Shown here piece after piece: positions 3,940 to 64,000 of a stretch of 64,000 bases of DNA (within the stretch, counting starts at the first letter, position 1; the number at the start of each line of letters is the position of its first letter). This stretch comes from Octopus bimaculoides (lineage: Eukaryota): contig NC_069002.1 of NCBI RefSeq assembly GCF_001194135.2, positions 37,413,433 through 37,477,432 on the forward strand. Reading direction: 5' to 3'. Under the pieces are notes generated by a model, which was not told the DNA's origin, ran no database searches, and saw only the letters and a program-made list of their open reading frames with translations. Made by a program: the position numbers and the translations under genes.

Positions 3940-4420
3940 CATCATCATCATTGTCATCACTTGATGTTCGTTTTTCCATGCTGGCATGTTTTGGACAGTT
4001 TGAAAGGTTCCGTTTTGGCTTGGTTTCTACAGCTTGATATGCTTCCTAATGCCAACCACATTACAGAGTGTGCTGGGTGCTTTTTATGTGGTACTTTGGT
4101 TTTAGGATACCAATTCTGTTATGGTGGGCAGGTCTTCTTGAATACAACAATGTGCTACATATCTTAGTCCTCCTTTATCTCCCTCCCTTGTAAGGCCTAG
4201 CATTTTGAGATTGGCCTTCAATACTTTTTCCCATCTCTTCCTGGGTCTCCTTCCCTCTTCCACAACTTGCCTCCATTTTAAATAACCAGAATCTGTTTAT
4301 GCAACCATCCTAACTATTCTTCTCTCAATACCTTAGTGCTCTGTCACACGTGTACACTGACATTGCACATCCAGTGGAGCATACTAGCTTCATTCCTCTC
4401 TAGTTTTCATATATACAGGA
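3940..4420 (-). mobile_element. 5'-truncated RTE-clade LINE 3' end
   Basis: Minus strand reads CGRG-RPRKRWEKVLKANLKMLGLT (RTE C-terminus), then a 3'UTR (..CATGCCAGCATGGAAAAAACGAACATCAAGTG) and a (TGA)n-like tail. Confidence 0.7.
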
Positions 4421-8619: not shown

Positions 8620-9000
8620 GTGTAAAAGATCATTATCATCATTTAATGGTCATTCTCCATGCTGGCATGGGTGGGATGGTTTGGCAGGAGCAGGCCAGGC
8701 TGGAGAGGTGCTTGGACTCCATTTGTCTGTTTTGGTATGGTGTCTATGGCTGGGTGCCCTTCCTAATGCCAACCACTCTGCAGAGTGTGGACTGGGTGCT
8801 TTTAATGTGGCACTGGCATGGGTGTTTTACATGGCAGTGGCATAGGCACTTTTATATGATCCTGGAATGAGTGTTTTTACGTGGCACCATGGTACTTTTG
8901 CATGGCACCATGGGTACTTTTACATGGCACCATGGGTACTTTTACATGGCATTGACACATGTGCTTTTACGTGGCACCGACATCTGTGAACCCACACCAC
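8620..9000 (-). mobile_element. RTE-type 3'UTR/tail repeat containing a degenerate ~22-nt tandem array (TGGCACCATGGGTACTTTTACA)
   Basis: Same CCATGCTGGCATGGGT..GGATGG..CCTAATGCCAACCAC sequence as 3960-4130 and 28105-28400; tandem units at about 8790-8990. Confidence 0.65.
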
Positions 9001-13604: not shown

Positions 13605-13950
13605 GTAGGGGTAAAAACCCTTTTGGTCTCGAATGATCATGGGATTGCACCTAGAAAGTTCCCTTCCAAGATACAAATCCAGGCAAGGTTGTTTATGGAG
13701 GACCAGCAATCGCCCATGCATGCCAGCCTCCCCTCTCCACACCACCGATGTTGTCCGAGGGAAAAGGCAAAAGGGGCCAGTATAGCTTGGCACCAGTGAG
13801 GTTGCAACTCGTTTCTACAGCTGAGTGAACTGGAGCAGCATGAAATAAAGTGTCTTGCTCAAGAACACAACACAGCCTGGTCCAGGAATCGAACTCACTA
13901 CCTCATGATTGTGAGCCTGATGCTCTTACCACTGAGTCATGTGCCTTCAC
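13605..13950 (-). mobile_element. tRNA-derived SINE family C (CORE-like central domain)
   Basis: Minus strand GTGAAGGCACATGACTCAGTGGTAAGAGC (A box), GAGTTCGATTCCTGG (B box), GTGTTCTTGAGCAAGACACTT (CORE-like); partial copy at 62221-62317. Confidence 0.75.
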
Positions 13951-25130: not shown

Positions 25131-28104
25131 CAGACATGTATGTGATCATGTATACACATATACGCAGAATACATTCCCAGCAACCTATCATCAGCTGTTG
25201 GTGTTAGTAATCCAGAGCAAAAGAAACAGAAGATTAACTCCTCTATCTTTCTAATCCACCTGAAATCTAACTCGTTAATTCCTGACATATTTTTAATGAG
25301 TCTCTCCTTCTTTTTCCCCCTCATATATTATTCATATATTTTGATATCAGCTGTTTTACCAAAACTGCCATTATCACTCTCATATCTTTTGAAAATTGAT
25401 TTTCCTTTTTATATATTTTTACTTTTGCTTTTTAGTTTATTGAGTAAAAATGAAGTTTTCCAAAATTGGAGTTTTATCACAAAGCTTTCTCTTCTTTCTT
25501 TTTTCTCTTTCTTTATATATTCTGAGACTGTAATTTTCTAAAAATTCTAGTTTTGCTGGTTGACGAAACCTAATCAGTGCAGGTTATAAAATTATTCACA
25601 TTTAAATTATTTTGCATATTGCTATTTTACTAGTGTACTACTCGTTAAAAGTAACGAGGCTTATGTCTGCCTCGGAAATTCTTAAAGGGTTTCCTTCAAA
25701 CCTTGCTTCAGTTTTTTTCTTGTGTTTCATTTTGCCTTCTTGTTAATCTTTTCCCCCAACTCATTTCATTACATCTTCTTTTCCTCTCTCTATATTTCCT
25801 TTGCCTTTTTCTCTCACTGACAATCTTCCTTTTTTTCATTCCCAACATCTCTCTCTCTCTCTCTCATGTATGAATTTCCTTCTTCTCTCTCACTCTTTCT
25901 CTATTACCCTGTTATTCTATCCTATTCACTCTCCAACTCTCCCTCTCTATTATAGAGTTTTCTTGCCTTTCTTTCTCTCTTACTTGTGCTTTCTCTCCCT
26001 CATTCTTTATTCCATTCCTCCCTATATTTTACTGTCTGCTCGTCAACCCTTTTTTATGGTTGTACCTGTTATAAACCTGGGATACATAGAACCAAGACAG
26101 TCATATAGTAATGGCTATTAATTCTTCTCACGGAGTAGACTGCAATATGTGTAACTACCAGTAAAGTAAATCCAAAAACCTGGTCTTCAGCAATCCAGCA
26201 GTACTAGTAATAATGTCCACCAGTATTTGGCTGTTGCCTTTGTCTCCATATCGCAAATGCTTCAGATTGTGAGATCAGTGTTGATTGAAAGATAAAAAGA
26301 ACAGACCAAAATACCAACTGGGATTGTTATTGTCTTTCATGTTCTTGGATTCTTTGATATTGATTCATTGAAGCCAGCTCTGATCCAACTTATTTTATGA
26401 TCAAACTTATTCTATCCATAACTCTCCTATTTTTTTGCTCTAGCCTAATTCAATGTGTCCTTTTTTTTTAAGATGGTAGAGTGTGATCTGAGGGATATTT
26501 GGCTGTTGTGTCTTGTAGGATGCTTGACCACTCAAATGAGTGGTTTCCAACCTTTTAACAATGCAACCCATTTCGACTAATCAGTTTTCCTGTGTGGACC
26601 CCTTTTTTAGTATATTCCAGTGAGGCTTAGTTAACATTTCATCCTCTTTCAGTGTGTGTGTGTGTGTATTTAAGCATATATTTCCTCTTCTTCCATTCTT
26701 CCACCATTAACACAATCATTACAGAGAGAGAGTCTATCCAATCCAGTCCAACAAGAAATAGTGGGTTTTTTTCAATTAGTTAAATTGTAGCCTCCTCCCT
26801 CTTTCTGTCCCCTTTTTTTATTTCTAATACACTGCAATCCTCATTCTGCTTTCTCTTTCTCCCCCCCCCCCCCCGATTCCCCTCTTACTCTCTCTTTCTT
26901 TCTCTGGATTAGTGATTTTCTGTGCACCTTGTTACTATCATTACAATCATCATCATCGTCATCATCATCATCATTGTCATCATAGCTTTGTTACAACCAT
27001 CAACATCATCTTAGCATAATCTGCATCATCAACTCCATCATCATCATCATCATCACCACCAGCAACAATCATCATCATCATCAACACAATATCCTTATCA
27101 GTAACAGCGTAACTGGCCTACATATGTATATATAATCATTAACGATATTGTTAATTAATCTTCTGGTCACTGTAACCAGGTGAAGGTTACAACAGTATTG
27201 AGATCAGATGAAATCCAATCAGATTAGGATTTTATTTGGCAGTCAGGGCTTCACCTCCTCTCACCTTGCTCTCTCTCTCTCTCTCTCTTCACTTAGATTC
27301 TGGTGATATTGCTGCTTCACCTTCCTACAGCATTCACTCATGCAACTGTTATTTTTTAAATCCAGGTCAGAACTGATTGAACTGTGTGCAAATCCATTTG
27401 CCACTAGGGGACAATGCCACACATTCAAATATGCCTCCGAAAACCAATTGAGTCTAATGACTGTGAGAAATGTTATCATGTAACTGTTGGCCAAACCAAG
27501 TTATATGGAGATGCAGTCAACCACACAGCTAGTTGGCAGCCGACAGATCCTTTGCTATTACGACCTGAGGACTATTGCATGTTCTGACAATATGGTGGTT
27601 AATTGAATTGAGAGCAGAAGGATGAGGGCAATCTATATCATGAAAATGGTTGAATACACTGAAGTCATATCATATTGTAATAGTTATTTGTTAAGTCCCA
27701 GGTCAACCTCAGTTGAGTAGTCTTATGGTTAGTCATTCCAACCATGACTATCTTATATTTTATTCAAACAGTGCATCTTGGAATACATTATCCAATGTGT
27801 CACACAGTATTTTTGTTCTTGCTTTTTTTTTTAATCTGTAGAGTGTGATTTGAGGGAAATTTGGCTGTTATTTCTAGCCACTTGAGTGACCAGTTAAAGG
27901 TTCCTTTACTGGTTTGTAACAACTGATCTAAGTCTGTTGTGTGTTATTGAGAAGACAATTTAGAAACCACAGAAGCAACAACAACAGATAATGCTTTGTA
28001 TTCTGGGAGATTAAACTAATTAACCTATTTTGAGATCTATTCTAGGAGTGATAGATTTTTGCATGGAAAGATTATTTGTGTGTGTACACACACACATCAT
28101 CATC

Positions 28105-28410
28105 TCATCATTTAACATCCACCTTCCATGCTGGCAAGGGTTGGATGGTTTGACAGGAGCTGGTAAGCCAGAGGACTGTGCCAAGCTCTACTGTTTACTT
28201 TGGCATGGTCTCTATGGCTGGATGCCCTTCTTAATGCCAACCACTTTATTGAGTGGACCGGGTGCTTTTTACATGGCACCAGCACTAGCAAGGTCACCAA
28301 GTAAGTTGCAAGACAAAAATCCCTTAACTGAGAATGGGAGCAGAATTGAGGGAGATAGCTTTGTACCAGAAGATGAGAGGTTAGTGTATGGCAGAGGGAT
28401 AGAAACAGGT
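28105..28410 (-). mobile_element. RTE-type 3'UTR/tail repeat
   Basis: Same family as 3960-4130 and 8620-8830. Confidence 0.65.
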
Positions 28411-28420
28411 ATCATACTAT

Positions 28421-29337
28421 AAGTTCCTGGAAGACAGTGTCACTCCTGGAAATGTGGAGAAAATTTATCAGCTTTGGCATGAGGATCATTGGAGGACAAT
28501 CAATGATTTTACTGATGTTGTTGGTCTGTCGTATGCCTGAGCACCATGCAAGCAATCTTAACATCTGAATTGAACCAGCGGCATGTCTCTGCCAAATTTG
28601 CTCCCTGCCTGACCACAGAAAGAACATGCCATTGAGGACCCATCCTTCATGTCGAGGATCATCATCAGTGACAAGAGTTGGGTCTATGAGTGCGACCCTG
28701 AGACAAAGCAGCAATCGTCACAATGGAAGACCCCTTAAGCTCCATGACCGAAGAATGCATGACAGTGCCACTGCTCAATCAAGAGTGTGTTCATCATTTT
28801 TTTCAACATCCGCAGTATTGTGCATCAAGAATTTGCCCCCCCCCCCTTCCCTGGGCCAGACCATCAATCGAGAGTTCTACTGTGATGTTTTGAAGTGTTT
28901 GAAGGCAAAACATTAGGTGAAAGCAACCGGATCTGTGGAGTGCAAGGAATTGAATTTTTCCTGATAACAATGTCACTGAGCTTTTCTCACTGATGAGTTT
29001 CTTGCCAAAAACAACATGGTATCACTTCCACACCCACCCTTTTCACCTGATTTAGCATCTGTGGACTTCCATCTTTTCCCCAAGATGAAAGTGCAGCTCA
29101 GAGGTCACCGTTTTAACACTGTTGTCCAAATCCAGAGCAATTGGAGAAGCTCTTTGATTCATTTGTAGAAAAAGACTTCCAGGCCAGATTCCAAAAGTGA
29201 CAGGAATACTGGGACTGGTGTATCGCTGTGCTCGGTGACTATTTTGAAAGAGATGATGCTATAACTTTGGTAAATAAGTTATTTTGTTTTTTTATTAAAC
29301 ATAATTAAGTCCAGGAACTTTTGAGAATTACCTTCAC
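28421..29337 (+). mobile_element. Degenerate mariner (DD34D) transposon with 5' internal deletion
   Basis: IIISDKSWVYECDPETKQQSSQWKTP (TGDE.W), GQTINREFYCDVLK, HPPFSPDLASVDFHLFPKMK (YSPDL). TIR core AAGTTCCTGGA at 28421 and its complement TCCAGGAACTT at 29310. Confidence 0.9.
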
Positions 29338-34715: not shown

Positions 34716-36150
34716 AGAAAAGCGAAGAGGATGAAGAGAAATATGAATTACTTTTAGGAACATTTTCATTATTTCCTATCCGATATTTATGAGATGTTGT
34801 GTACTAATATTGGCCAATCCACTTTCGTTATTGACCTTAATCCAGCAAGTTCAATAACTTCATTAAGTCTTACATCACATTTGCTAGAACTTTATTATCT
34901 TCACAAACCAACAAGGGAACCAGTATGTGATCATTCAGCCTGCAGAAGTAACAATCAAATTCCCTCACTGCATCCTACCATTCTAAAGAGAAACTGGGAT
35001 GGTCACAACTGGGATGGTCACAACTGGAATGGCTCTGGTCATAGGTCTCTTCAGTCAAGGATGACCTTGAGCTAAACAACAACATCAACAATAACTGAAC
35101 ATTCAATTGCAAAATGGGTTTTCACTTTCAACCTTAGATACAAGAGATAGATACAATGTTCAGATCCAAAGGGATAGATACAAGGTTCAAATCCCTTTAT
35201 TGATCATATTTCTCTTGTCTGTCTTATACAAAATTCTTACAATATCCTGTTAAATCTATGACTGATGGGAAATACCCAGGCCCACTTTAATTAATAGTAA
35301 AGTTGATACTAATGGATTTGATGAGCCAAGAAATAAAGGTGGCTAATTGGCAGAACCATTACAATATTGGCCAAAAGGCTTTACAGTATTTATTCCAGCT
35401 CTCTGCAGTCTGAGTCGAAATGCTACTGAGATGACCTTTGCCCTTCGTCCTTTTGGAGTCAATGAAATAAAATACCAGTCCAGAACGGTACGTTGGTGGA
35501 ATGGTTAGAGTTGGGCAAAATGCTTTGTAGGATTAATGTTATTACATTCTGTTGCAAGCACTGGGTCATGTCTTTTGTTTGAGAATTATACCCTTCTTTC
35601 TCCTCACCAAGTCTCTGGGGCCATGGAAAGTAAAGGGTCATGGGAACTACCCTTCTTTCCTTGACCAAGCAGTAAAGAAGTAATTCAATTTCATCTGAAG
35701 TGAAGTGAAAAGAGAAAAACATTCTCTAAATGGTTAATTCTGGTTTGCTCTTTGGTAACCATAGAGACAACTCCAGATATGTTTCACTCAGACCTCTTCA
35801 CTCAAATATAGTGTACTGATACTTGCCAGACTTTAGAATGACTGAAGAGTTGGAGTGAATAAACATTGGCAGGTAAATATGTGAGAATTTAAATGAATGA
35901 CTGCAGGAAAATTAGTCAAGGACCATCTTCTGCATGGAAAATGCTTATTTAAGCCATATTTAATGGGTGTTTCTTTTTTCTTTTGCAACTGTCTTATATT
36001 TTAATTATTTTAATTATTTTAATTATTTCAGATAGGTCCTTGTAATAGCTGGCACCCTTTAAATCTATGTTTCTGTCTCTATTTCCATCCTGATGTCTGC
36101 TGTAGTGACTAAAATCCTATCAAATGCCTGCTTTTTATTTTCATTTGCAG

Positions 36151-52816
<16,666 letters not shown>

Positions 52817-53339: not shown

Positions 53340-54040
53340 CTGTTAATCTATCCATATTTCATCTCTACTTTCCTGTACCTATCTAGCTAGTTCTATAGCT
53401 AATTAACCCTCTGTATATTTGACTAAGTTGGTAGCTAACTATCTATCTTTTTAGCTTCTCAGCTAGATAGGAAACTACTTACCTATCTATTTACCTTTCT
53501 ATCTGCATTTATCTATATCAAACTATCCACCTACTAACCTATAGAGTTGATTACCCATATATCTGAATAGCTAATTTACTTATCATATTAATCTTGCTAG
53601 CTACCTAGCATGCTGATTTCTACTTNNNNNNNNNNNNNNNNNNNNNNNNNNNNNNNNNNNNNNNNNNNNNNNNNNNNNNNNNNNNNNNNNNNNNNNNNNN
53701 NNNNNNNNNNNNNNNNNNNNNNNNNNNNNNNNNNNNNNNNNNNNNNNNNNNNNNNNNNNNNNTATATATGATGGTGATGATATATATGCATCTATCTATT
53801 TATCTGTCTATCTTTAAGTAGCTAGCCAGCTAGCTAGTTACCTACCTACCTACCTACCTATCACCTACCTACCTCTCTAACTAGCTATCAATATCTATTT
53901 ACCTACTTATCTATCAAGCTGACAACTATCTAAATAGCTTCCTAGCTAGCTAACTTCCTACTTACCTATTTTAGAATCATACTATCTAGTTAGCTAACCC
54001 CCCCCCTCTCTCTATATATATATATACATATATATATACA
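53340..54040. repeat. Degenerate TATC/TAGC/TACC tetranucleotide mosaic
   Basis: Runs of ctatctat, tagctagc and tacctacc on both sides of the gap at 53626-53762. Confidence 0.8.
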
Positions 54041-56627
54041 CTTCATACCGTAGACTTAATGATTTAGATACAAAGAAGATGATTCCTTCAGGAAAAGATT
54101 GTCATTAAAGGAAGATGAAAGAAAACTAAGTCCTTCCCATAACTGTAAACTTCTTTAGAACAGCAGGCTAATTCATTCCACTTCATAACTTTTTTCACTT
54201 CTCTATTTGCTGAAGTAAACCATTTCCAATTTCCTTTAGTCCTAATGATCCACTTGTAAATCTAGTTATTCGACTATCTGGCTATGTATCTACTTAGCTA
54301 TCTTGCTAAATAGATAGCTATCCAAATACACCATTAACGCTATAGTATTGGCATGAATTTGAAAAATATAAACCCCCAAATTTTATTTTATTCTGTTGGT
54401 TAACAATTAAGCTGGAAATATTTAATGCTCATTAATAATTAATGATAATAATGATTAAATAGTTTAACTTAGTTAATCTTTCTTTTCTACTTGTAAATGT
54501 CAGCTGGATCGGAATTAAAACAAAGCCCTATCCACACACTCACATAAACACAAAGGCATCTCATCTCATCTCGTATTGTATCATGCTTGATAAATCATTT
54601 TTTAAAAAGCCTAGCCTTGATGCTGAGACTTTCTATTCATAAAGCAAATCAAATAAACATAACAAGTGAGTTACTTTAAGTTTCAGTCTCTCAGCTCCTT
54701 TGAATCTTGTGTCCCCATTTTTATGATAATTAGGAAAAGAATTGCGAAGTATTTTCCTTTAAAACTTCTGCGGCTGTTAAATTGGATAACTCTTCAATAG
54801 TAACGGGTCATTCTTTGACTGTCAATTGTTTTAATCTTGAAGAAATTGAAAAAAAGGTTTTGTTTAATTGAGGAAATACAAATGTGTAACTTCAATGAGT
54901 TAAATGAGTTTAATTCATCAATTCATATTATGTGGGGAATGTAAAAAGAGTGGAGGAAAGGGAAGATAGATAGATATTACAAAAGGTAAATTACAGGAAT
55001 AAGAAGGAGGTTGGAAAAGGAAATTGGGCAAATATGATTTTAGTCATGTAAAGGTGGTTTATCTCAGTTACATAAAAGTAGCTGTTCAAAGTGCTTGCAT
55101 CTCTTGAACATCTCTGATCTGGTGTTTAGCAAATGCAAGCCCTTTGTAAAGCATCTAGTACAGAACTGAGGGAATCTACATTTACTGGACAAAACCACAT
55201 AGATGCATGCAAAGCCATCTATAATTCACTTTTTCTATCTTTCCTCCTCTTTTTACTCTCCTTCTAACTTAGTTTTTTTGGGTTTTTTCTCATGTCATCT
55301 ATCTCATCCTCCTTTATGTTCCACCACACTCATATTACACATTTGTCTTCCCTTGATTTTAAAGAAAAAAACAATGTTTTTGTTTTTTTTTCTCCAATTT
55401 CACCATGATTAAAACCACTGACACTCAAAGGGCATTAACTTACTAATAATAGCAAAGAATTATCCACTTTAGTAGAAGCTGGAGTTTTAAAGGTAAAACT
55501 TCTTTTAAAACTTTTCATAAAACTATGGAAATATCAGGCTTGAAAGAGCAGTGTGAAGGTAGCCCACATGTGTATGTGTCTATTTTATTTAAGTATATAT
55601 ATATATATATATATGTATATGTAGATAGATAGATAGATAGATACTTGTATCAGCATGTATGTACAAAGCAAGATGGAGAAAAGAGCACTTGAATAACGAA
55701 GTATAGAGTTTAAATGAAACTGGAAAACTTCAGAAATTGTTACTCCATGTTTCACGTTACTGATTGTCAGAGAGAAGGAAACTTTCAGAACAATACAATG
55801 TGTTGTTTTAAAAGTTCACTTCTGTTTTATCATGGTTATGTGAAACACAAATAACAGTTTGTAAAGTTTTTCAACTCCAATAAAATTGTGTCTGTGTGTG
55901 TGTGTGTGTGTGCACGCATGCATGCACACACAGACACACACATACATATGGAGAGAAAATATTTGTAAAATGTAAAACAAATTCTTTGTAGCTTTTGGGT
56001 TGCCTTTTTTTTTTGTTGTTATTGTTGTTTAATTTATTACCTTTACCCCTGCCACCAATTAATGATTCTGACCAAATTTTGTTGAATGATGCAGAACGTT
56101 GCATCGAAAACCAGCTGGCAAAGAATCCACCTGGGGTTAAACTAGTAGTAACATTCACCTGCCACTTTAATGTGGCGACTCACTCTACTGTTTAGTATAC
56201 GTTACTACTCTATCTCTTCTTGAGATTTTATAACTTGCTACTTTGCAAATCAGTGACTGATGGTCACTTTGTTTACAATATATGACTGGTAGAAGTGGAT
56301 CTTAGCTATCACTCCATTGCGCAGGCACGCAGGGCTGAGGAAGAGCCAACTAGCTTGAAGCAGGGCCAATCCCACAATCCTGTTCAGTTGAATTAGGTAC
56401 TTAAATTGAGGCACCTTGTTAGGTTGATCTAATTCGCACACCCAAACAATATCAGGTGAACATCAAACTCTGTGCAGAAGTGTTTGCACTTAATGTTCTT
56501 GCTGTGTTTGCAGATAACACAACCCAACTTAGGGAAGAGATCCGCTCGTGGTTGTTCAGACATGTACTTTATATAAAAAGTCTTTCTCTATTTCTGAAGT
56601 GCAGAGTCCAGGGTAGGTGAATAAAAT

Positions 56628-56911
56628 ATGAGTAACAAAGATTTTACAGGTGTCGATTCATCACGGTCGTTTCAAGTGATTCCTTTAATTGATTAACGAA
56701 AACATTAAATCACTGCAAAGAAACCATTTTCATTGCAATGGCTGCATAGACTTCAAACACAAAGGACCAACCAATCTTTGTGTTTGAAGTCTATGCAGTC
56801 ATCTGATGAAAATGGTTTCTTTGCAGTGATTTAATGTTTTCATTAATCAATTAAAGGAGTCACTTGAAACGACTGTAATGAATCGACACCTGTAAAATCT
56901 TTGTTACTCAT
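56628..56911. repeat. Long inverted repeat (hairpin): arms 56628-56764 and 56776-56911, 11-nt loop
   Basis: Manual alignment of the left arm to the reverse complement of the right arm: 5 transitions plus one small internal loop over 137/136 nt. Confidence 0.97.
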
Positions 56912-57981
56912 TTATATATATATATTTTTTCTTTTATCCTTTTATCCTTTTATCCTTTTATCTTTTAGTCTTTTTGACTGCAGTCATTTATAAAAACGGT
57001 ATTTATGTAAAATAATATTATGTATAGAAGACAATGTCTTTACTATCTGTACAGAATCAAAAGAAAGAATTGGTTGTGGGTGAAGAGAACAGAGCAGTGG
57101 GTGGGGGTGTCTGTGTGAACTTGGTATCTGCAGAATTAGAACTCACTTATTCTCTGTTTGAAAACCCAAAAGCTAAAATTACAAAATACCAAAAGTATGA
57201 AACATATCCTCCTCCTCCACTACTACTACTACTACCAACAACAACAGCCCAACTGAACAACACTTTGTAAAATGGTTACTAAAAAGAAGAGAATTTTTTT
57301 CATTTATAAAACTCAGGATGTGAATTCCTTGTCCCATTTCATTTTTTGGCTTTTGCCTATTCCTTCCCTTTTATTGAAAAAAATTTTCTTGTTTTTACTT
57401 TTCCATTTAATTTTTATTACCATTTTATTTTATTTCCATTTTTGTAAAATTTACTGTTTTTTTAATGTTGTTGTTATTATTATTATTATTATTATTCTTA
57501 CCACCTAAGAATTTTGCTTTGATTTTGGAGTTAAACATATCAAATCTTAAAAGTAAAATTAAAAAGAAAAACAAGCAAAAAAAAATCATGCAAAATTATT
57601 TTTTTAGCTGCATTTTTGAATCACTTCAATAACATATTTGTCCTTTTGAGTTTGTGTATGTGTGTGTATGAGCATGTGTGTGTGTGTGTGTGAGTGTGTT
57701 ATTGAGTTTGCTTTGATTTCATTTTTTTTTTTTTTTTCATTTCTCCTCCCACCAAATCACTAATTTTCTCACAAATTTCAATGTGAGAAATTGAAAATTA
57801 AACGAACAAATCCATTATATATTCTCTCTCTTTTTTCTATAAAACTAACCAAAATGTGATGGGACTCAACTAATTTTTATCGGTTTTGAATTCATTATCT
57901 GTTAAAATCAAAACCTAGAAAACGATATTAACATTATACTTCGTTGCTTTACAAGTAAATGACAGTCATTAGTCATTATTA

Positions 57982-59470
57982 TTGGCAGAATTGTTAGAGT
58001 ACCGGAAAAAATGTCTTGTGATACTTAGTTACGGCTCTTTACTTTCTGAGTTTCAATTCTGTCAAGGTCAACTTAGCCTTTTTATTCTTCCAGGGTCAAT
58101 AAAATAGAGTATCTGTTAAGTAATTAAGTAATGGGGGTTGATTTAACCAACTCTCACCTCCCCACAAATACCAGGCCTTATGCATGTATTAGAAGCAATT
58201 ATTAATATTAGAGACTAGTATAAAAAAACGGTAAGCTGGCAGAATCATTACCAAACCAGACTCAATGTTTAGCGGCATTTTATCCAGCTCTTTATGCTGT
58301 GAGTTTAAATTCTATCAAAGTCAGCTTTGCCTTTTATTCTTTTGGGGTTGATAAAATAAGTACCAGTTGAGCATTGGGGGTTGATGGAATCAACCAGCTT
58401 CCAATATTTCAGGCTTTGTACCAATATTAGAAAGGATTATTGTTGTTGTTGTTAGAAAGATCAATGGAGTGACAGAATTAGTAGAGCGGTGAACAAAATG
58501 CCTTGTAGTATTTGGTTACATCTCTTTACAGTCTGAGTTCAAATCCCACCAGGATCATTTTTGCTTTTATTTTTTTCTTGGGTGGATAATATAAGTACCT
58601 ACTGAGTTGACTTAATTGACTGCCCCTTTCCTTAAAACGTGTGGCTTTTGTGTCAATATAAGAAACTATTGTCATCATCATCATCATCATCATATCTCTT
58701 CTTGTTCTCAATCCTTTCATCATTCTGAGATGTAGATGTCATACAGTAACTGAGTTCAATACCGGGGTTGTTGCAATTAATCATAAACCCCCTAGTGACC
58801 TAAAATGGGTGGCTGTCAACCTCTGTTCCAAATCATTATTATTCTTACTATTTTTATATAGAGCAGTAAGTCAACAGAAGAGGTTTGCACCATGGATGAA
58901 ATGCCTTGTGGTATTTAGTTACATAACCTTGTATCATTAAAATAATGTACTTTATGGGATGGAAACAGTTTTTAGCTAAACCTCAAAATTTATGGCCTAC
59001 AAGCATCAGATTGGCAAAATTGTTCGCACATCAAACAAAATACCATGTGGCATGTTCCAGCTCTTTACATCCTGGGTTCAAATCCCCACCAAGATCAACT
59101 TTCTTTTTATCCTTCTGGTGTAAATAAAACAAAGCACCAGTCAAATATTAGGGATGGTATTGATTATTCCCCTCCCTGTAAAATTTCAGGCTTTGGGCCT
59201 GTGTTAGAAACATTAATATTACCAGGGTACAGAATCTGTAAAGGCCTGGCCTAAATACCATTCGGCTATTTTCTGTTCTTGGTTTCAAGTCTCACTAGTG
59301 TTCACTTTGCTTTTCATTTTTGAGAATTATATAAGCTTCAATAATTTACCAATCCTCCTCCTATCTCACACTTTCACCTGATCCAATTAACTATGCTCTC
59401 TGATTTACCTTTAGAAATTTAGCCAGGGTCTTAAACTATAAAATCAAATCATTATTATTATTAATGTTAT
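57982..59470 (+). mobile_element. Stack of about 7 head-to-tail SINE family A copies (full and partial)
   Basis: Heads at about 57982, 58229, 58465, 58740 (partial), 58865 (partial), 59008 and 59230; most end in ATT/GTT/ATC repeats. Confidence 0.75.
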
Positions 59471-60215
59471 ATGGTTTTTAGGCGGGGGGGGGGGGGGNNN
59501 NNNNNNNNNNNNNNNNNNNNNNNNNNNNNNNNNNNNNNNNNNNNNNNNNNNNNNNNNNNNNNNNNNNNNNNNNNNNNNNNNNNNNNNNNNNNNNNNNNNN
59601 NNNNNNNNNNNNNNNNNNNNNNNNNNNNNNNNNNNNNNNNNNNNNNNNNNNNNNNNNNNNNNNNNNNNNNNNNNNNNNNNNNNNNNNNNNNNNNNNNNNN
59701 NNNNNNNNNNNNNNNNNNNNNNNNNNNNNNNNNNNNNNNNNNNNNNNNNNNNNNNNNNNNNNNNNNNNNNNNNNNNNNNNNNNNNNNNNNNNNNNNNNNN
59801 NNNNNNNNNNNNNNNNNNNNNNNNNNNNNNNNNNNNNNNNNNNNNNNNNNNNNNNNNNNNNNNNNNNNNNNNNNNNNNNNNNNNNNNNNNNNNNNNNNNN
59901 NNNNNNNNNNNNNNNNNNNNNNNNNNNNNNNNNNNNNNNNNNNNNNNNNNNNNNNNNNNNNNNNNNNNNNNNNNNNNNNNNNNNNNNNNNNNNNNNNNNN
60001 NNNNNNNNNNNNNNNNNNNNNNNNNNNNNNNNNNNNNNNNNNNNNNNNNNNNNNNNNNNNNNNNNNNNNNNNNNNNNNNNNNNNNNNNATGGGGAGAGAG
60101 AGAGACTGATAAAATACATTTTAGACTGAAATAAGTACTGGGGTTGATATGGCAACTAAAACTTTTGAAGATTGTGCTCCATATGACTGGAGTTCAATAA
60201 CTTTATAAGAGTAAA

Positions 60216-60269
<54 letters not shown>

Positions 60270-60839
60270 GTATTGGGCTTTTTTCCCCATTTGTAAATAA
60301 TTCTGTCTGTGAGTTTATCATACTGGACCAAGACTAGTTGCCCTTTCTTAGGACAGGGTCTCTTCAAATTCACTTATAAGATTTTTTTCCAGGCTGTCCT
60401 TACAACTTACCTGTCTAGCTTACAGCTCATATGTATGCCCCACCTCCCATTCTAGAAGTCTTATTCCACAGGCAATTGTTCTATGTCCACCTGGACAGAA
60501 TTTTATATATTTAGAAAGTTTTGTGCTCTTTCCCCTGCTTTCAAACTTCACACTGTGAACGAAACACAAATCAATCAATCAATCTATAAAATAATGAACT
60601 ACATTTTGTGTTTTAATTTTTATTTTATATTTACAGTTTATATTTCTTCTTGTACGATGTATTCTAAATAGTTTTGGAGGTCATTTCCCCTGTAAAGGTT
60701 TTGGGAACAAAGCACAAAATTTCTTTTGTTTTTTTTTTTACTTTTTTTTTCTTTTTTGGGGGGAGAGAAACTGTTGAAACAGCAGAGATGTGTATCTTGT
60801 TGAAGGCAAATCTAGAAAGCCATGTTGAGAGGAAGGCAT

Positions 60840-61340: not shown

Positions 61341-62837
61341 GTATGTATCTTTGTATGTGAGTTCTTCTTTTCTCTCTCTCTCTGTTTTTGATGTCTTCAT
61401 CCTCTCAACATGGCAAAATGTATCAACTGTAAATTTAAGAAATTATGAGAGGGATTTTTAAAATTATAATTGCTTTAAATTAAAATGTAATGATTTAAAA
61501 TATATAATAAAAAAAAGAAAAAAACTTTAAATATGTCCCCCATCCCTCAAAAGAAGAAAATTGATTTCCCTCCAAAAATGTTGATATTAGTGCACCAACT
61601 GCAGAATTAGTGCACAAACTGCAGAATACTGTTTTATTTGAAAAGAATTCTAAACTTATAGTTTTTTAGGTGAAAAATAAAAATGTTAAAAAGCAAAAAA
61701 AAAAATAAATTAAATAAATAATAATAATAATAACGACCTATGAATTGAAATAAAGGTTAATTGTACTTGACATTGGTTTGTTGACATTGACTTTGTCAAC
61801 TCGAAAAATTGACGTAATTCATTCAGACTTGTAAATTTATTTTCATGTTAAAACTTGTCATTTATGCTGTGTCACCTTCATTCTGAGAATAAAATATAAA
61901 AAAAAAAATACCAGCAATCATCAAAATGCAACTTTCTTTTGTTATTGTTGTTGTTATTGTTATTTCTATTATTGTTGTTGTTTTCTTTCTATTGCTTTTA
62001 TGGTGGTAATGATGGAGCATGGATATTGAAAAGCTAACAAACCTGCACATCTCAGCAAGTGGTCATCCTCTTACCTCTCTCAGGACCTATGAGAACACAA
62101 AAGCAGTGAAGGAAGTCTAGAGGGGTTAAATGGTTCATGTGGCCAAGACATTGTGTGCAACAGTTTAGTTCATCTGCACACAGATGCCTTAGTGCATACT
62201 TAAAAGCACGGGGACCATTTCTTTCTCAAGAACACAACACAGCTCAGTTTGAGAATTGAACTCACTACCTTGTGATTGTGAGCCCAATGCTTTTACCACT
62301 GAGTCATGCATCTTCACAGTTAGAGGTAGAGAAGAGAGAGAAAGCATGTTGTTAGAAAATTCATTGTCAGAAAGGATTTAAAAAAAAGAGAGAAAAGATA
62401 CATTGAAGGTTACAGCAGATAAAGAGGAGAAAGGGTCTTAATAAAAGTGTGAAATTCACAGGAGAGGAGAAAAAGTGTTGGTAGAAAGGGTCACATTCGA
62501 AATAAAGACGGGAGAAAATGTTGATAAAAAGTTGAATAACACAGAAATAAGTGTTGGTAGGAAATTGAATTTATAAAGAACAAAATAGAGACGGTTTCAA
62601 AGGACGTAGTGTGAAAGTAAATGAGTTGTAGGAATCTATCCTGGAGACAAATTGAGAATTTAGATATGGATGCAAGTAAAAAGGGTTTTTGTTGAACCAA
62701 AGTTCAGTAAAGGTTAAGTAGAGGACTTCCGATGGAAGGGATTCCATTCAAATTATTTTTGAGTGACACACCATATAAAGTGTATCCGTTCATCTTCTAT
62801 ACTGAAATAACTTGGCTACATAAACTGTTCTCCACTT

Positions 62838-64000
62838 AGCTATGCAGACGATCTTCCCTTTGGCTATACACATGATCTTCCGTTTAGCTACAAACGATCT
62901 TCCGTTTAGCTATACAAACGATCTTCCATTCAGCTGTACAAACGATCTTCCCTTTAGCTATACAAACGATCTTTCCTTTAGCTGTACAAACGATCTTCCC
63001 CTTAGATTTACAAACGATCTTCCCCTTAGCTATACAAACGATCTTCACTTTTGTTATACAAACGAGCTTCCCTTTAGCTGTACAAACGATTTTTCATTTA
63101 GGTAAACAAACAATCATCACTTCAGCTATAAAACGATCTTTCCTTTAGCTATACAAACGATCTTCCCTTTACCTATACAAACGATCTTTCCTTCAGCTAT
63201 AAAAAAGATCATTTCTTAAGCTATACAAATGACATTCCTTTAGCTATACAAACGATTTCCCTTTAGCTATACAAACGATCTCCCCTTTAGCTGCACAAAC
63301 GACCTTCCCTTTAGCTATACAAACGATCCTCACTTCAGCTATACGAATGATCTTTCCTTTGGCTATACAAACGATCTTTCTTTTAGCTATACAAACGATC
63401 CCTCCTTAAGCTATACAAATGACATTCCTTTAGCTATACAAACGATCTCCCCTTTAGCTATACAAACGATCTCCCCTTTAGCTGTACAAACGATCTTTCC
63501 TTTAGCTATACAAACGANNNNNNNNNNNNNNNNNNNNNNNNNNNNNNNNNNNNNNNNNNNNNNNNNNNNNNNNNNNNNNNNNNNNNNNNNNNNNNNNNNN
63601 NNNNNNNNNNNNNNNNNGCTGTACAAACGACCTTTCATTTAGCTATACAACCGATCTTTCCTTTGGCCATACAAACGATCTTTCCCTTCGCTATAGAAAC
63701 GATCATTCATTTAGCTATACAAACGATCTTTCCTTTGACTATACAAACGATCTTCCCTTCAGCTATACAAACGATCTTTCCTTTGGCTATACAAACGATC
63801 TTTCCTTTGGCTATACAAAAGATCTTTCCTTTGGCTATACAAAAGATCTTTCCTGTAGCTATACAAATTATGTGTTCTTTGGCTATATAAACGATCTTCC
63901 CTTTAGCTAAACAAACGATCATTCCTTTGGCTATACAAACGATCTTCCATTTAGCTATACAAACGATCTTCCGTTTAGCTATACAAACGATCTTCCCTTT
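62838..64000. repeat. 24-nt minisatellite (CTATACAAACGATCTTCCCTTTAG)n, runs off the window end
   Basis: Roughly 44 sequenced units, interrupted by a 100-N gap at 63518-63617; gives 8-aa periodic ORFs (TNDLPFSY). Confidence 0.97.

What the first reader, a model, noticed from the sequence alone, without database searches (positions are those of the whole stretch)
56628..56911. ~137-bp near-perfect hairpin 3.8 kb downstream of the TMEM184 stop
Seen: arms of 137 and 136 nt, an 11-nt loop (GACCAACCAAT), one internal loop and five substitutions, all transitions. On a + strand RNA these give three G-U wobbles and two A-C mismatches, and A-C mismatches are favoured ADAR sites (established). Two changes are CpG decay, so drift is also possible. 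It is single-copy in the window and has no clean TSD. Candidates are a 3'UTR editing or retention element, a hairpin-RNA/endo-siRNA or miRNA-like precursor, or a foldback MITE.
Basis: partly seen in the sequence, partly recalled or inferred. Interest (0 to 1): 0.7.

Follow-up and report, generated by a model that had tools for sequence, protein, structure and literature searches.

The report
Old palindromic repeat in octopus DNA
The 284-base near-perfect hairpin is real, but it is an old palindromic repeat, most likely a small transposon relic, sitting past the TMEM184B gene of Octopus bimaculoides and decaying like neutral DNA, so it is ordinary for this genome.

Summary
In detail: arms of 137 and 136 nt, an 11-nt loop, five transitions and one small bulge. 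The RNA fold is -208 to -216 kcal/mol (z = -33), and it starts 3,811 nt after the TMEM184B stop codon. The window is Octopus bimaculoides chromosome CM046622.1.

The same hairpin sits at the orthologous site in O. sinensis and O. vulgaris, which split from O. bimaculoides about 34 Mya. It is therefore not an assembly artefact.

It is no better conserved than its flanks (about 88% against 85-87%). Its pairing has decayed to about 87% and 82% in the other two species. Only 1 of 133 pairs changed on both sides, no more than shuffled controls. No arm difference is shared between lineages, so the palindrome was perfect at about the time of the split. O. bimaculoides has few changes because its lineage evolves about half as fast; other repeats in the window show the same.

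The G-U and A-C pattern follows automatically from transitions and is no evidence for ADAR.

Best reading: a foldback, MITE-like insertion in a (TA)n tract, or less likely a one-off inverted duplication. ADAR hyper-editing, if it is transcribed, would be a by-product. Copy number, transcription and editing could not be tested here.

The parts
56628..56764 (.). Left arm of the palindrome (137 nt). It carries 4 of the 5 O. bimaculoides-lineage substitutions (56662 T->C, 56680 C->T, 56697 T->C, 56741 A->G) and the complex change at 56734-56737.
56765..56775 (.). 11-nt loop or spacer, GACCAACCAAT. It varies strongly between species (GATAACCTAAC in O. sinensis, GACAAACTAAC in O. vulgaris): 5 of 11 sites differ against 28 of 270 in the stems, Fisher p = 0.005.
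56776..56911 (.). Right arm of the palindrome (136 nt). It is 99.3% identical to the ancestral arm inferred from six arms; its only change is + strand C->T at 56874, a CpG decay.
56734..56737 (.). Left side of the internal loop (TGCA), opposite CTG at 56803-56805. It is a complex change specific to the O. bimaculoides left arm; all five other arms read CA-G.
56912..56925 (.). Right flank TTA(TA)n, followed by a (TTTTATCC)n microsatellite. In O. sinensis and O. vulgaris the left flank has four extra bases (ATAA), so the palindrome extends 6 bp further on each side (ATATAA...TTATAT). That ancestral state is compatible with a TA or ATAT target-site duplication, but the (TA)n context makes this indecisive.
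56620..56627 (.). Left flank AATAAAAT, which includes an AATAAA hexamer at 56620. O. bimaculoides has a 4-bp deletion here, just before 56628, relative to the other two species.
52283..52816 (+). Last coding exon of TMEM184B (stop TGA at 52814-52816). It is the nearest gene and lies 3,811 nt upstream of the hairpin. The other exons found are at about 36124-36569, 41308-41464, 44827-44921, 46653-46727, 49127-49221 and 50945-51118.

Best explanation
This is a real, old palindromic DNA element. It is most likely one copy of a foldback, MITE-like non-autonomous transposon that landed in a (TA)n tract. It lies in intergenic DNA, or at most a very distal 3'UTR, 3.8 kb past the TMEM184B stop codon of Octopus bimaculoides.

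It was a perfect palindrome of at least about 290 bp at about the time the O. bimaculoides lineage split from the O. vulgaris/O. sinensis lineage, roughly 34 Mya. Since then each arm has drifted independently at the neutral rate of its lineage. It still looks near-perfect in O. bimaculoides because that lineage changes about half as fast, not because pairing is selected.

Shown here: it exists, it is orthologous in three species, it is not specially conserved, it shows no covariation, and its rate matches the background.

Inferred: a transposon origin. Also inferred: any transcript that reads through it would fold into a duplex of about 137 bp and be hyper-edited by ADAR, as happens to many palindromic repeats in this genome. 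That would be a by-product rather than a function.
For: - Identity of the window: it is 100% identical to O. bimaculoides GCA_001194135.2 CM046622.1. The hairpin is L020:30478-30761, which is record positions 37470060-37470343.
- Orthologous copies: O. sinensis L018:47140-47420 at 87.7% identity and O. vulgaris L021:112678-112959 at 88.1%, inside colinear flanks at 85-87%. In 250-nt windows the hairpin scores 83-88%, among the less conserved stretches downstream of the gene.
- Decay of pairing: arm differences are 5 substitutions plus one bulge in O. bimaculoides (8/136 if the bulge columns are counted), 18/134 in O. sinensis and 24/135 in O. vulgaris. The folds are -207.7, -148.9 and -132.0 kcal/mol.
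- Site patterns: in the six-arm alignment no site has a left-versus-right difference shared by both lineages (0 of 135; upper 95% bound 2.2%). At most one site (column 40) has both O. bimaculoides arms derived together.
- Covariation: 1 of 133 pairs changed on both sides, 21 pairs are simply broken, and 339 of 500 shuffles reach the observed score.
- Rates: in other repeats of the window, polarised by their paralogues, changes are 20 in O. bimaculoides against 49 in O. sinensis, and 42 against 75 in O. vulgaris. The hairpin gives 5 against 17 and 3 against 21. Per site that is 1.8% against 2.0% for O. bimaculoides and 6.2% against 4.8% for O. sinensis, neither difference significant.
- The class is common here: other palindromic elements of 148-284 nt lie in the same gene's introns in O. 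vulgaris and O. sinensis, and two of them have extra partial copies elsewhere. Porath et al. 2017 report that 0.44% of random 50-bp loci in O. bimaculoides lie in long, nearly perfect dsRNA-forming structures, and that palindromic repeats can be edited on their own (PMC5625713).
- Tc1-Mariner and MITE families are annotated in O. vulgaris (PMC13282606).
- The split date of about 34 Mya is from PMC10700109.
Against:
- Nothing was found in scans of public collections with an exact 20-mer, but those collections hold mostly prokaryotic and viral DNA, so the scans say little.
- There is no unambiguous target-site duplication. The termini (TAAATGAGTAAC... or an inner TA|CAGGTGTCG...) were not matched to any superfamily, and no Repbase, Dfam or octopus repeat library was available.
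- No empty site was seen. Argonauta hians aligns only in exons.
- With O. vulgaris as the comparison, the lineage asymmetry is nominally stronger than the background (3:21 against 42:75, Fisher p = 0.03). A weak extra constraint in O. bimaculoides is therefore not fully excluded.
Confidence: 0.6

Rival explanations
1. It is a one-off local inverted duplication. A fold-back or template-switch repair event would have copied about 140 bp of local sequence in reverse next to itself shortly before the species split. It was never mobile and has drifted neutrally since.
For: - It is single-copy in all DNA available here.
- It has no clean target-site duplication and no recognisable transposon terminus.
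- It was a perfect palindrome at the split.
- It shows the same neutral decay as under the best explanation.
Against: - Its size (284-296 bp), short loop, AT-rich (TA)n target and possible TA/ATAT duplication fit small palindromic transposons.
- Several such elements lie nearby in the same gene in Octopus, two of them demonstrably repeated.
- The DNA sample searched is far too small to call the element unique.
Confidence: 0.2
2. It is a selected double-stranded RNA element in an extended TMEM184B 3'UTR. On this reading ADAR hyper-editing or nuclear retention controls the mRNA, and selection keeps the stem nearly perfect in O. bimaculoides.
For: - The duplex of about 137 bp is near-perfect on either strand.
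- O. bimaculoides has exceptional hyper-editing (PMC5625713).
- The element lies on the sense side downstream of a neuronally relevant gene.
- There are nominally fewer O. bimaculoides-lineage changes than background in the O. vulgaris comparison (p = 0.03).
Against: - The pairing is not maintained in O. sinensis or O. vulgaris.
- There are no compensatory changes.
- Its sequence conservation equals or falls below that of its flanks, whereas the first 1.2 kb or so after the stop codon is 92-99% conserved and then drops.
- The per-site rate in O. bimaculoides equals that of other repeats (1.8% against 2.0%).
- Transcripts of a distant cephalopod relative (about 82% identical in the coding sequence) extend only about 1.8 kb past the stop codon and lack the hairpin.
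Confidence: 0.06
3. It is a hairpin-RNA/endo-siRNA locus or a miRNA-like precursor, diced into small RNAs.
For: - It is a long, near-perfect inverted repeat, which is the architecture of Drosophila hairpin-RNA loci.
- It gives a sub-threshold Rfam match to MIR7993, which is itself a long hairpin (64.6 bits, E = 3.7e-11).
Against: - The MIR7993 score is below its gathering threshold of 100, and no family in the whole window reaches its gathering score.
- A 137-bp stem is not a canonical animal pre-miRNA.
- Molluscs, including O. bimaculoides, are reported to lack a siRNA-type Dicer and Argonaute and detectable endo-siRNAs (PMC12479628).
- The structure is not conserved.
Confidence: 0.03
4. It is an assembly artefact, such as a chimeric or fold-back read.
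For: The window is a draft with many N gaps.
Against: Both arms are present at the orthologous site in three separate assemblies of three species, each with its own substitutions.
Confidence: 0.01

Closest known systems
Palindromic (foldback) MITEs, for example Stowaway-type Tc1/mariner-derived MITEs and the palindromic Harbinger-derived repeat of Xenopus that is hyper-edited on its own (Porath et al. 2017, PMC5625713)
   Same: It is non-coding, about 290 bp long, and almost entirely two inverted arms with a short loop. It sits in an AT/TA-rich site with possible TA flanks and forms a long, nearly perfect duplex as RNA. It evolves neutrally after insertion.
   Different: No further copies, no unambiguous target-site duplication and no autonomous partner were seen. 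Its termini were not matched to any superfamily, so family membership is unproven.
Other palindromic repeats in Octopus introns: L018:26179-26341 = L021:91860-92022 (163 nt), L021:39858-40005 (148 nt), L021:55444-55690 and L021:15540-15806
   Same: They are in the same genus and the same gene, share the architecture (near-perfect hairpin, short loop) and often lie next to (TA)n. The 148-nt element also starts ATGA... and ends ...TCAT, and the 163-nt element starts TGAGT....
   Different: There is no sequence similarity beyond 4-5 terminal bases. Two of these elements have additional partial copies in the sampled DNA, whereas the hairpin studied here has none.
Drosophila hairpin-RNA (hpRNA) endo-siRNA loci
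   Same: It is a long inverted repeat able to form an intramolecular duplex of more than 100 bp.
   Different: The host clade is reported to lack the siRNA pathway (PMC12479628). The structure is not conserved, no target is known and small RNAs were not tested.
Inverted-repeat (for example inverted Alu) elements in 3'UTRs that are ADAR-edited and cause nuclear retention (established knowledge, mammals)
   Same: It would be a long duplex downstream of a coding region in an organism with very active ADARs.
   Different: Here one palindromic element supplies both arms. It lies 3.8 kb past the stop codon, beyond the conserved part of the downstream sequence, and neither transcription nor editing has been shown.

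Membership tests
MITE / foldback non-autonomous DNA transposon | Small (under about 800 bp) and non-coding | tested here: met
   284 nt (about 296 in the ancestral state). The longest stop-free stretch is 41 codons.
MITE / foldback non-autonomous DNA transposon | Terminal inverted repeats | tested here: met
   The arms of 137 and 136 nt span the whole element.
MITE / foldback non-autonomous DNA transposon | Target-site duplication of a length typical of a superfamily | tested here: inconclusive
   None is visible in O. bimaculoides. The ancestral flanks from O. sinensis and O. vulgaris allow TA or ATAT, but the site is a (TA)n tract, so such a match is expected by chance.
MITE / foldback non-autonomous DNA transposon | Many dispersed copies in the genome | not testable with these tools
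   No extra copy was found in about 280 kb of octopod DNA. Exact 20-mer scans of the metagenome, GTDB and IMG/VR collections gave only chance matches of 20-21 nt. No whole octopus genome or repeat library could be searched.
MITE / foldback non-autonomous DNA transposon | Empty orthologous site in a related species | tested here: inconclusive
   The element is present in all three Octopus species. In Argonauta hians only exons align, so the site cannot be read.
Conserved structured RNA (cis-regulatory hairpin) | Base pairs kept by compensatory changes across species | tested here: not met
   1 of 133 pairs changed on both sides, 21 pairs are broken, and 339 of 500 shuffles reach the observed score.
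Conserved structured RNA (cis-regulatory hairpin) | Sequence more conserved than neutral surroundings | tested here: not met
   The hairpin windows are 83-88% identical against 78-97% around them. Per-site rates equal those of other repeats.
Animal miRNA precursor / Rfam miRNA family | A match at or above a family's gathering score, and a hairpin of about 60-80 nt | tested here: not met
   The best match is MIR7993 at 64.6 bits against a threshold of 100. Nothing in the whole window reaches a gathering score. The stem is 137 bp.
hpRNA / endo-siRNA locus | The host has a siRNA-type Dicer and Argonaute, and the locus yields 21-23-nt duplex reads | not testable with these tools
   No small-RNA data were available here. 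The literature reports no such pathway or reads in molluscs, including O. bimaculoides (PMC12479628).
ADAR hyper-editing substrate | Long, nearly perfect intramolecular duplex | tested here: met
   133 pairs; -208 kcal/mol on the + strand and -205 on the - strand.
ADAR hyper-editing substrate | It is transcribed, with clustered A-to-G mismatches between RNA and DNA | not testable with these tools
   No octopus RNA reads or transcripts covering the locus could be retrieved. The only transcripts found are from a distant cephalopod and lack the element.

The most novel reading that the evidence does not exclude
The hairpin is included in a long, probably neural, TMEM184B 3'UTR isoform or a read-through transcript in O. 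bimaculoides, where it is heavily A-to-I edited. Because its duplex is still 96% paired only in this species, it would then impose a lineage-specific effect on the mRNA, such as nuclear retention, stability or dsRNA sensing, that O. vulgaris and O. sinensis have largely lost.
Probability: 0.07. Interest if true: 0.4.

Novelty: new member of a known kind. Interest (0 to 1): 0.15.

Why it matters
It matters little in itself. It is one of very many long dsRNA-forming palindromic repeats in a genome already known to be unusually rich in them.

Two things are useful. First, it is a worked example showing that a near-perfect hairpin beside a gene need not be functional. Orthologues show free decay, and the slow O. 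bimaculoides lineage alone explains why the hairpin still looks near-perfect. Second, a palindrome dated by a species split gives a small internal clock: its two arms serve as each other's outgroup. Here that clock gives about 1.9% change per site in the O. bimaculoides lineage against about 6-8% in the O. vulgaris/O. sinensis lineage over roughly 34 My, with a loop that changes much faster than the stems.

Tried and rejected
- **Rfam.** A permissive scan of 54000-59500 gave only a sub-threshold MIR7993 match and microsatellite-driven miRNA look-alikes. A scan of the whole window at gathering scores gave nothing.
- **First protein search.** The last-exon query gave a best hit of only 73% identity and missed the 100% match to the full-length Octopus protein. 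All listed hits were under 300 aa. The distant loci it led to (L001-L009) have no hairpin. A second search with a 402-aa multi-exon query identified Octopus.
- **Public DNA scans.** The exact 20-mer ATCACTGCAAAGAAACCATT gave 3 metagenome hits, 5 GTDB hits and no IMG/VR hit, all chance matches of 20-21 nt, or 40 nt at 82%. These collections hold little octopus DNA, so the result says nothing about copy number.
- **Transcripts of a relative.** The cDNA contigs L022-L031 are about 82% identical in the coding sequence and come from a distant cephalopod. They extend about 1.8 kb past the stop codon, cannot be aligned there, and have no hairpin.
- **Peptide search.** The longest stop-free stretch of the hairpin (41 aa) was searched against 1.84 billion protein representatives in the hope of catching spurious ORFs over other copies. 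It gave only weak repetitive matches at 29-45% identity.
- **Run accessions.** A literature search for the run and assembly accessions found nothing.
- **Repeat library.** The supplement of the O. vulgaris repeat paper holds no library sequences.
- **Bacterial promoter/terminator scan.** It is irrelevant to a eukaryote.
- **Gene conversion between the arms.** I considered it as the reason for the near-perfect O. bimaculoides stem and rejected it: at most one site has both arms derived together.
- **An inner Tc1/pogo-like end.** I considered TA|CAGGTGTCG... at 56645-56655 with an outer palindromic target. It is not supported by anything beyond the motif.
- **Search not run.** That would detect only families with several thousand copies or more.

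Full report
**Observation.** The left arm is 56628-56764 (137 nt), the loop is 56765-56775 (GACCAACCAAT) and the right arm is 56776-56911 (136 nt). The arms differ by five substitutions, all transitions, and one small indel region: TGCA at 56734-56737 opposite CTG at 56803-56805. As + strand RNA the mismatches are three G.U and two C.A. The fold is -215.9 kcal/mol with flanks, z = -33 against dinucleotide shuffles. The element alone folds at -207.7, and the minus strand folds as well at -204.9. The hairpin is single-copy in the window and starts 3,811 nt after the TMEM184B stop codon. The G.U/A.C pattern carries no information: a transition in a stem can only give one of these two, and the opposite strand simply swaps them (two G.U, three A.C).

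**What genome this is.** The window is eukaryotic, with introns, microsatellites, SINE-like repeats and N gaps. A first protein search with the last exon alone was misleading: the best hit was 73% identical and every listed hit was shorter than 300 aa. After locating the exons with relatives and a probe, a 402-aa query matched TMEM184B-like of Octopus sinensis at 100%. Its cluster also contains the O. bimaculoides and O. vulgaris proteins, and Argonauta hians matched at 91%. Fetching those loci showed that the window is 100% identical to O. bimaculoides GCA_001194135.2, chromosome CM046622.1. The hairpin is L020:30478-30761, record positions 37470060-37470343.

**Orthologues.** The hairpin is present at the colinear position in O. 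sinensis (L018:47140-47420, 87.7% identity) and in O. vulgaris (L021:112678-112959, 88.1%). The flanks there are 85-87% identical. [quoted passage not shown] In Argonauta only the exons and two short blocks align, so the site cannot be read there.

**Conservation downstream of the gene.** In 250-nt windows the first 1.2 kb or so after the stop codon is 92-99% identical between the Octopus species. Identity then becomes patchy, between 78% and 94%. The two windows holding the hairpin score 88% and 84% (O. sinensis) or 87% and 83% (O. vulgaris), among the less conserved.

**Is the structure under selection?** No.
- The arms differ at 18 of 134 sites in O. sinensis and 24 of 135 in O. vulgaris, and the fold energies fall to -148.9 and -132.0 kcal/mol.
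- On the three-species alignment, with the O. bimaculoides pairing imposed, 106 of 133 pairs never vary, 5 vary on one side only and 21 are simply broken.
- Only one pair (columns 40/245) changed on both sides. The covariation score is reached by 339 of 500 shuffles.

**Why O. bimaculoides still looks near-perfect.** Aligning all six arms lets each arm act as an outgroup for the other.
- No site shows a left-versus-right difference shared by both lineages (0 of 135; upper 95% bound 2.2%). The palindrome was therefore perfect at about the time of the split.
- At most one site has both O. bimaculoides arms derived together, so gene conversion between the arms is not what keeps them alike.
- The changes are simply unequal. 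The O. bimaculoides lineage has five substitutions and one complex indel, four of the substitutions in the left arm. The vulgaris/sinensis stem has 8 changes in the left arm and 10-11 in the right, plus later ones.
- The right arm of O. bimaculoides is 99.3% identical to the inferred ancestral arm.
- Polarisation corrects one detail. The CG at 56697-56698 is a T->C gain, not the ancestral state of a CpG decay. Only the change at 56874 is CpG decay.

**Is the asymmetry special to the hairpin?**
- With Argonauta as outgroup, the exons give 20 O. bimaculoides-specific against 30 O. sinensis-specific changes.
- Other repeats in the window, polarised by their own paralogues, give 20 against 49 (O. 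sinensis) and 42 against 75 (O. vulgaris).
- The hairpin gives 5 against 17 and 3 against 21.
- Per site, the O. bimaculoides lineage changed 1.8% of hairpin sites against 2.0% of other repeat sites. The O. sinensis lineage changed 6.2% against 4.8%. Neither difference is significant.
- Only the O. vulgaris comparison is nominally uneven (p = 0.03).

The simplest reading is neutral decay at each lineage's own rate, with O. bimaculoides about half as fast.

**What it is.** The element is non-coding: all frames have stops, and the longest open stretch is 41 codons. In O. sinensis and O. vulgaris the left flank has four more bases (ATAA), and the palindrome runs 6 bp further on each side (self-alignment spans 47134-47426 and 112672-112965). 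The ancestral element therefore read ...AAAATATAA ATGAGTAAC ... GTTACTCAT TTATATAT..., set in a (TA)n tract. This can be parsed as TA or ATAT duplications flanking the termini, but a TA-repeat context gives such matches by chance.

No second copy exists in the roughly 280 kb of octopod DNA available to me. The public collections I could scan hold little octopus DNA, so their chance-only matches are uninformative. A transposon origin is thus inferred from architecture and context.

That context is supportive.
- The same gene's introns in O. vulgaris and O. sinensis hold other near-perfect palindromic elements of 148-284 nt, often beside (TA)n, and two of them have extra partial copies nearby.
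- Tc1-Mariner is the most numerous TIR transposon group in the recently-active-insertion table of the O. vulgaris repeat annotation, and that table also lists MITE families (PMC13282606).
- Porath et al. report that O. bimaculoides has an exceptionally high fraction (4.4e-3) of loci in long, nearly perfect dsRNA-forming structures, and that palindromic repeats can be edited on their own (PMC5625713).

The alternative, a one-off fold-back inverted duplication, fits the single-copy observation equally well. It can only be separated by a whole-genome search or by an outgroup's orthologous site.

**How it most likely works.** As DNA it is inert apart from the usual instability of palindrome centres. 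The loop differs at 5 of 11 sites between O. bimaculoides and O. sinensis, against 28 of 270 in the stems (p = 0.005). As RNA, if any transcript reads through it, it would form a duplex of about 137 bp on either strand. By established ADAR biology and the octopus data of PMC5625713 it would then be hyper-edited, which is a generic fate of such repeats rather than a selected function.

The small-RNA readings are weak.
- Rfam gives only a sub-threshold match to MIR7993, itself a long hairpin family (64.6 bits against a threshold of 100), and nothing in the window reaches a gathering score.
- A survey that included O. bimaculoides found no siRNA-type Dicer or Argonaute and no endo-siRNA signature in molluscs (PMC12479628).

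Whether TMEM184B transcripts reach the hairpin is unknown. The only transcripts I could retrieve are from a distant cephalopod, extend about 1.8 kb past the stop codon and lack the element.

**Verdict.** The element is a new member of a known kind and is ordinary for this genome, so interest is low. The remaining unknowns, namely copy number, an empty site, transcription and editing, each need data that these tools do not hold.

Noticed in passing
window 57000-57249, 59000-59499, 60500-60749, 61500-61999: These non-coding blocks are 93-97% identical between O. bimaculoides and O. sinensis/O. vulgaris, against 78-88% around them. Window 61819-61863 also matches Argonauta hians L019:34678-34723 at 91%. 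The 59.0-59.3 kb block overlaps a 120-aa gene call in O. vulgaris (L021:115020-115382) that I suspect is repeat-derived.
   Followed up: partly
L018:26179-26341 = L021:91860-92022; L021:39858-40005; L021:55444-55690; L021:15540-15806: These are other near-perfect palindromic elements (148-284 nt, down to -141 kcal/mol) in TMEM184B introns of O. sinensis and O. vulgaris, several of them beside (TA)n. The 163-nt and 148-nt elements have extra partial copies elsewhere in the loci. They have no sequence similarity to the hairpin studied beyond 4-5 terminal bases.
   Followed up: partly
window 56765-56775 (loop): The loop evolves much faster than the stems: 5 of 11 sites against 28 of 270 between O. 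bimaculoides and O. sinensis (p = 0.005), and 2 of 11 between O. sinensis and O. vulgaris, whose flanks differ by about 1.5%.
   Followed up: partly
L018:47140-47420 versus L021:112678-112959: Between O. sinensis and O. vulgaris the left arms are identical (0/135) while the right arms differ at 7 of 135 sites, against a local background of about 1.5%. This is unexplained; it could be chance, polymorphism or assembly error.
   Followed up: no
whole window versus L018/L021: The O. bimaculoides lineage appears to change about half as fast as the O. vulgaris/O. sinensis lineage in presumably neutral repeats (20 against 49, and 42 against 75, paralogue-polarised changes). The exons with Argonauta as outgroup lean the same way without reaching significance (20 against 30, p = 0.2).
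   Followed up: partly
window 4007-4070, 8724-8787, 28192-28255; 13853-13950, 62220-62317; 37365-38039; 38858-39982: There are two SINE-like repeat families, the second with a tRNA-like head that ARAGORN does not call. There are also two inverted repeat pairs in intron 1 of TMEM184B (124 nt at 85% and 134 nt at 83% complementarity, with spacers of 427 and 857 nt) that could also form dsRNA in the pre-mRNA.
   Followed up: no
window 28030-28916 and 47019-48012: These are decayed transposon coding fragments inside or near TMEM184B: a mariner-like transposase remnant (...GQTINREFYCDVLKCL...) and reverse-transcriptase pieces (...LLYIDDL...) with a cysteine-rich finger ORF. They were not classified with profile searches.
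   Followed up: no
window 62800-64000: A 24-nt tandem repeat array (consensus near TTAGCTATACAAACGATCTTCCCT) runs to the end of the window and is interrupted by an N gap at 63518-63617.
   Followed up: no
L018 versus window, introns of TMEM184B: The coding range of the gene spans 16.7 kb in O. bimaculoides and 33.6 kb in O. sinensis, and the O. vulgaris gene model spans 99 kb. There are large lineage-specific insertions or unaligned stretches, for example L018:25604-32862.
   Followed up: no
tool behaviour: A 171-aa query from the last exon did not retrieve the 512-aa Octopus protein that contains it at 100% identity, whereas the 402-aa query did. Short queries seem to be matched mainly to short database proteins, which nearly hid the host's identity.
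   Followed up: yes
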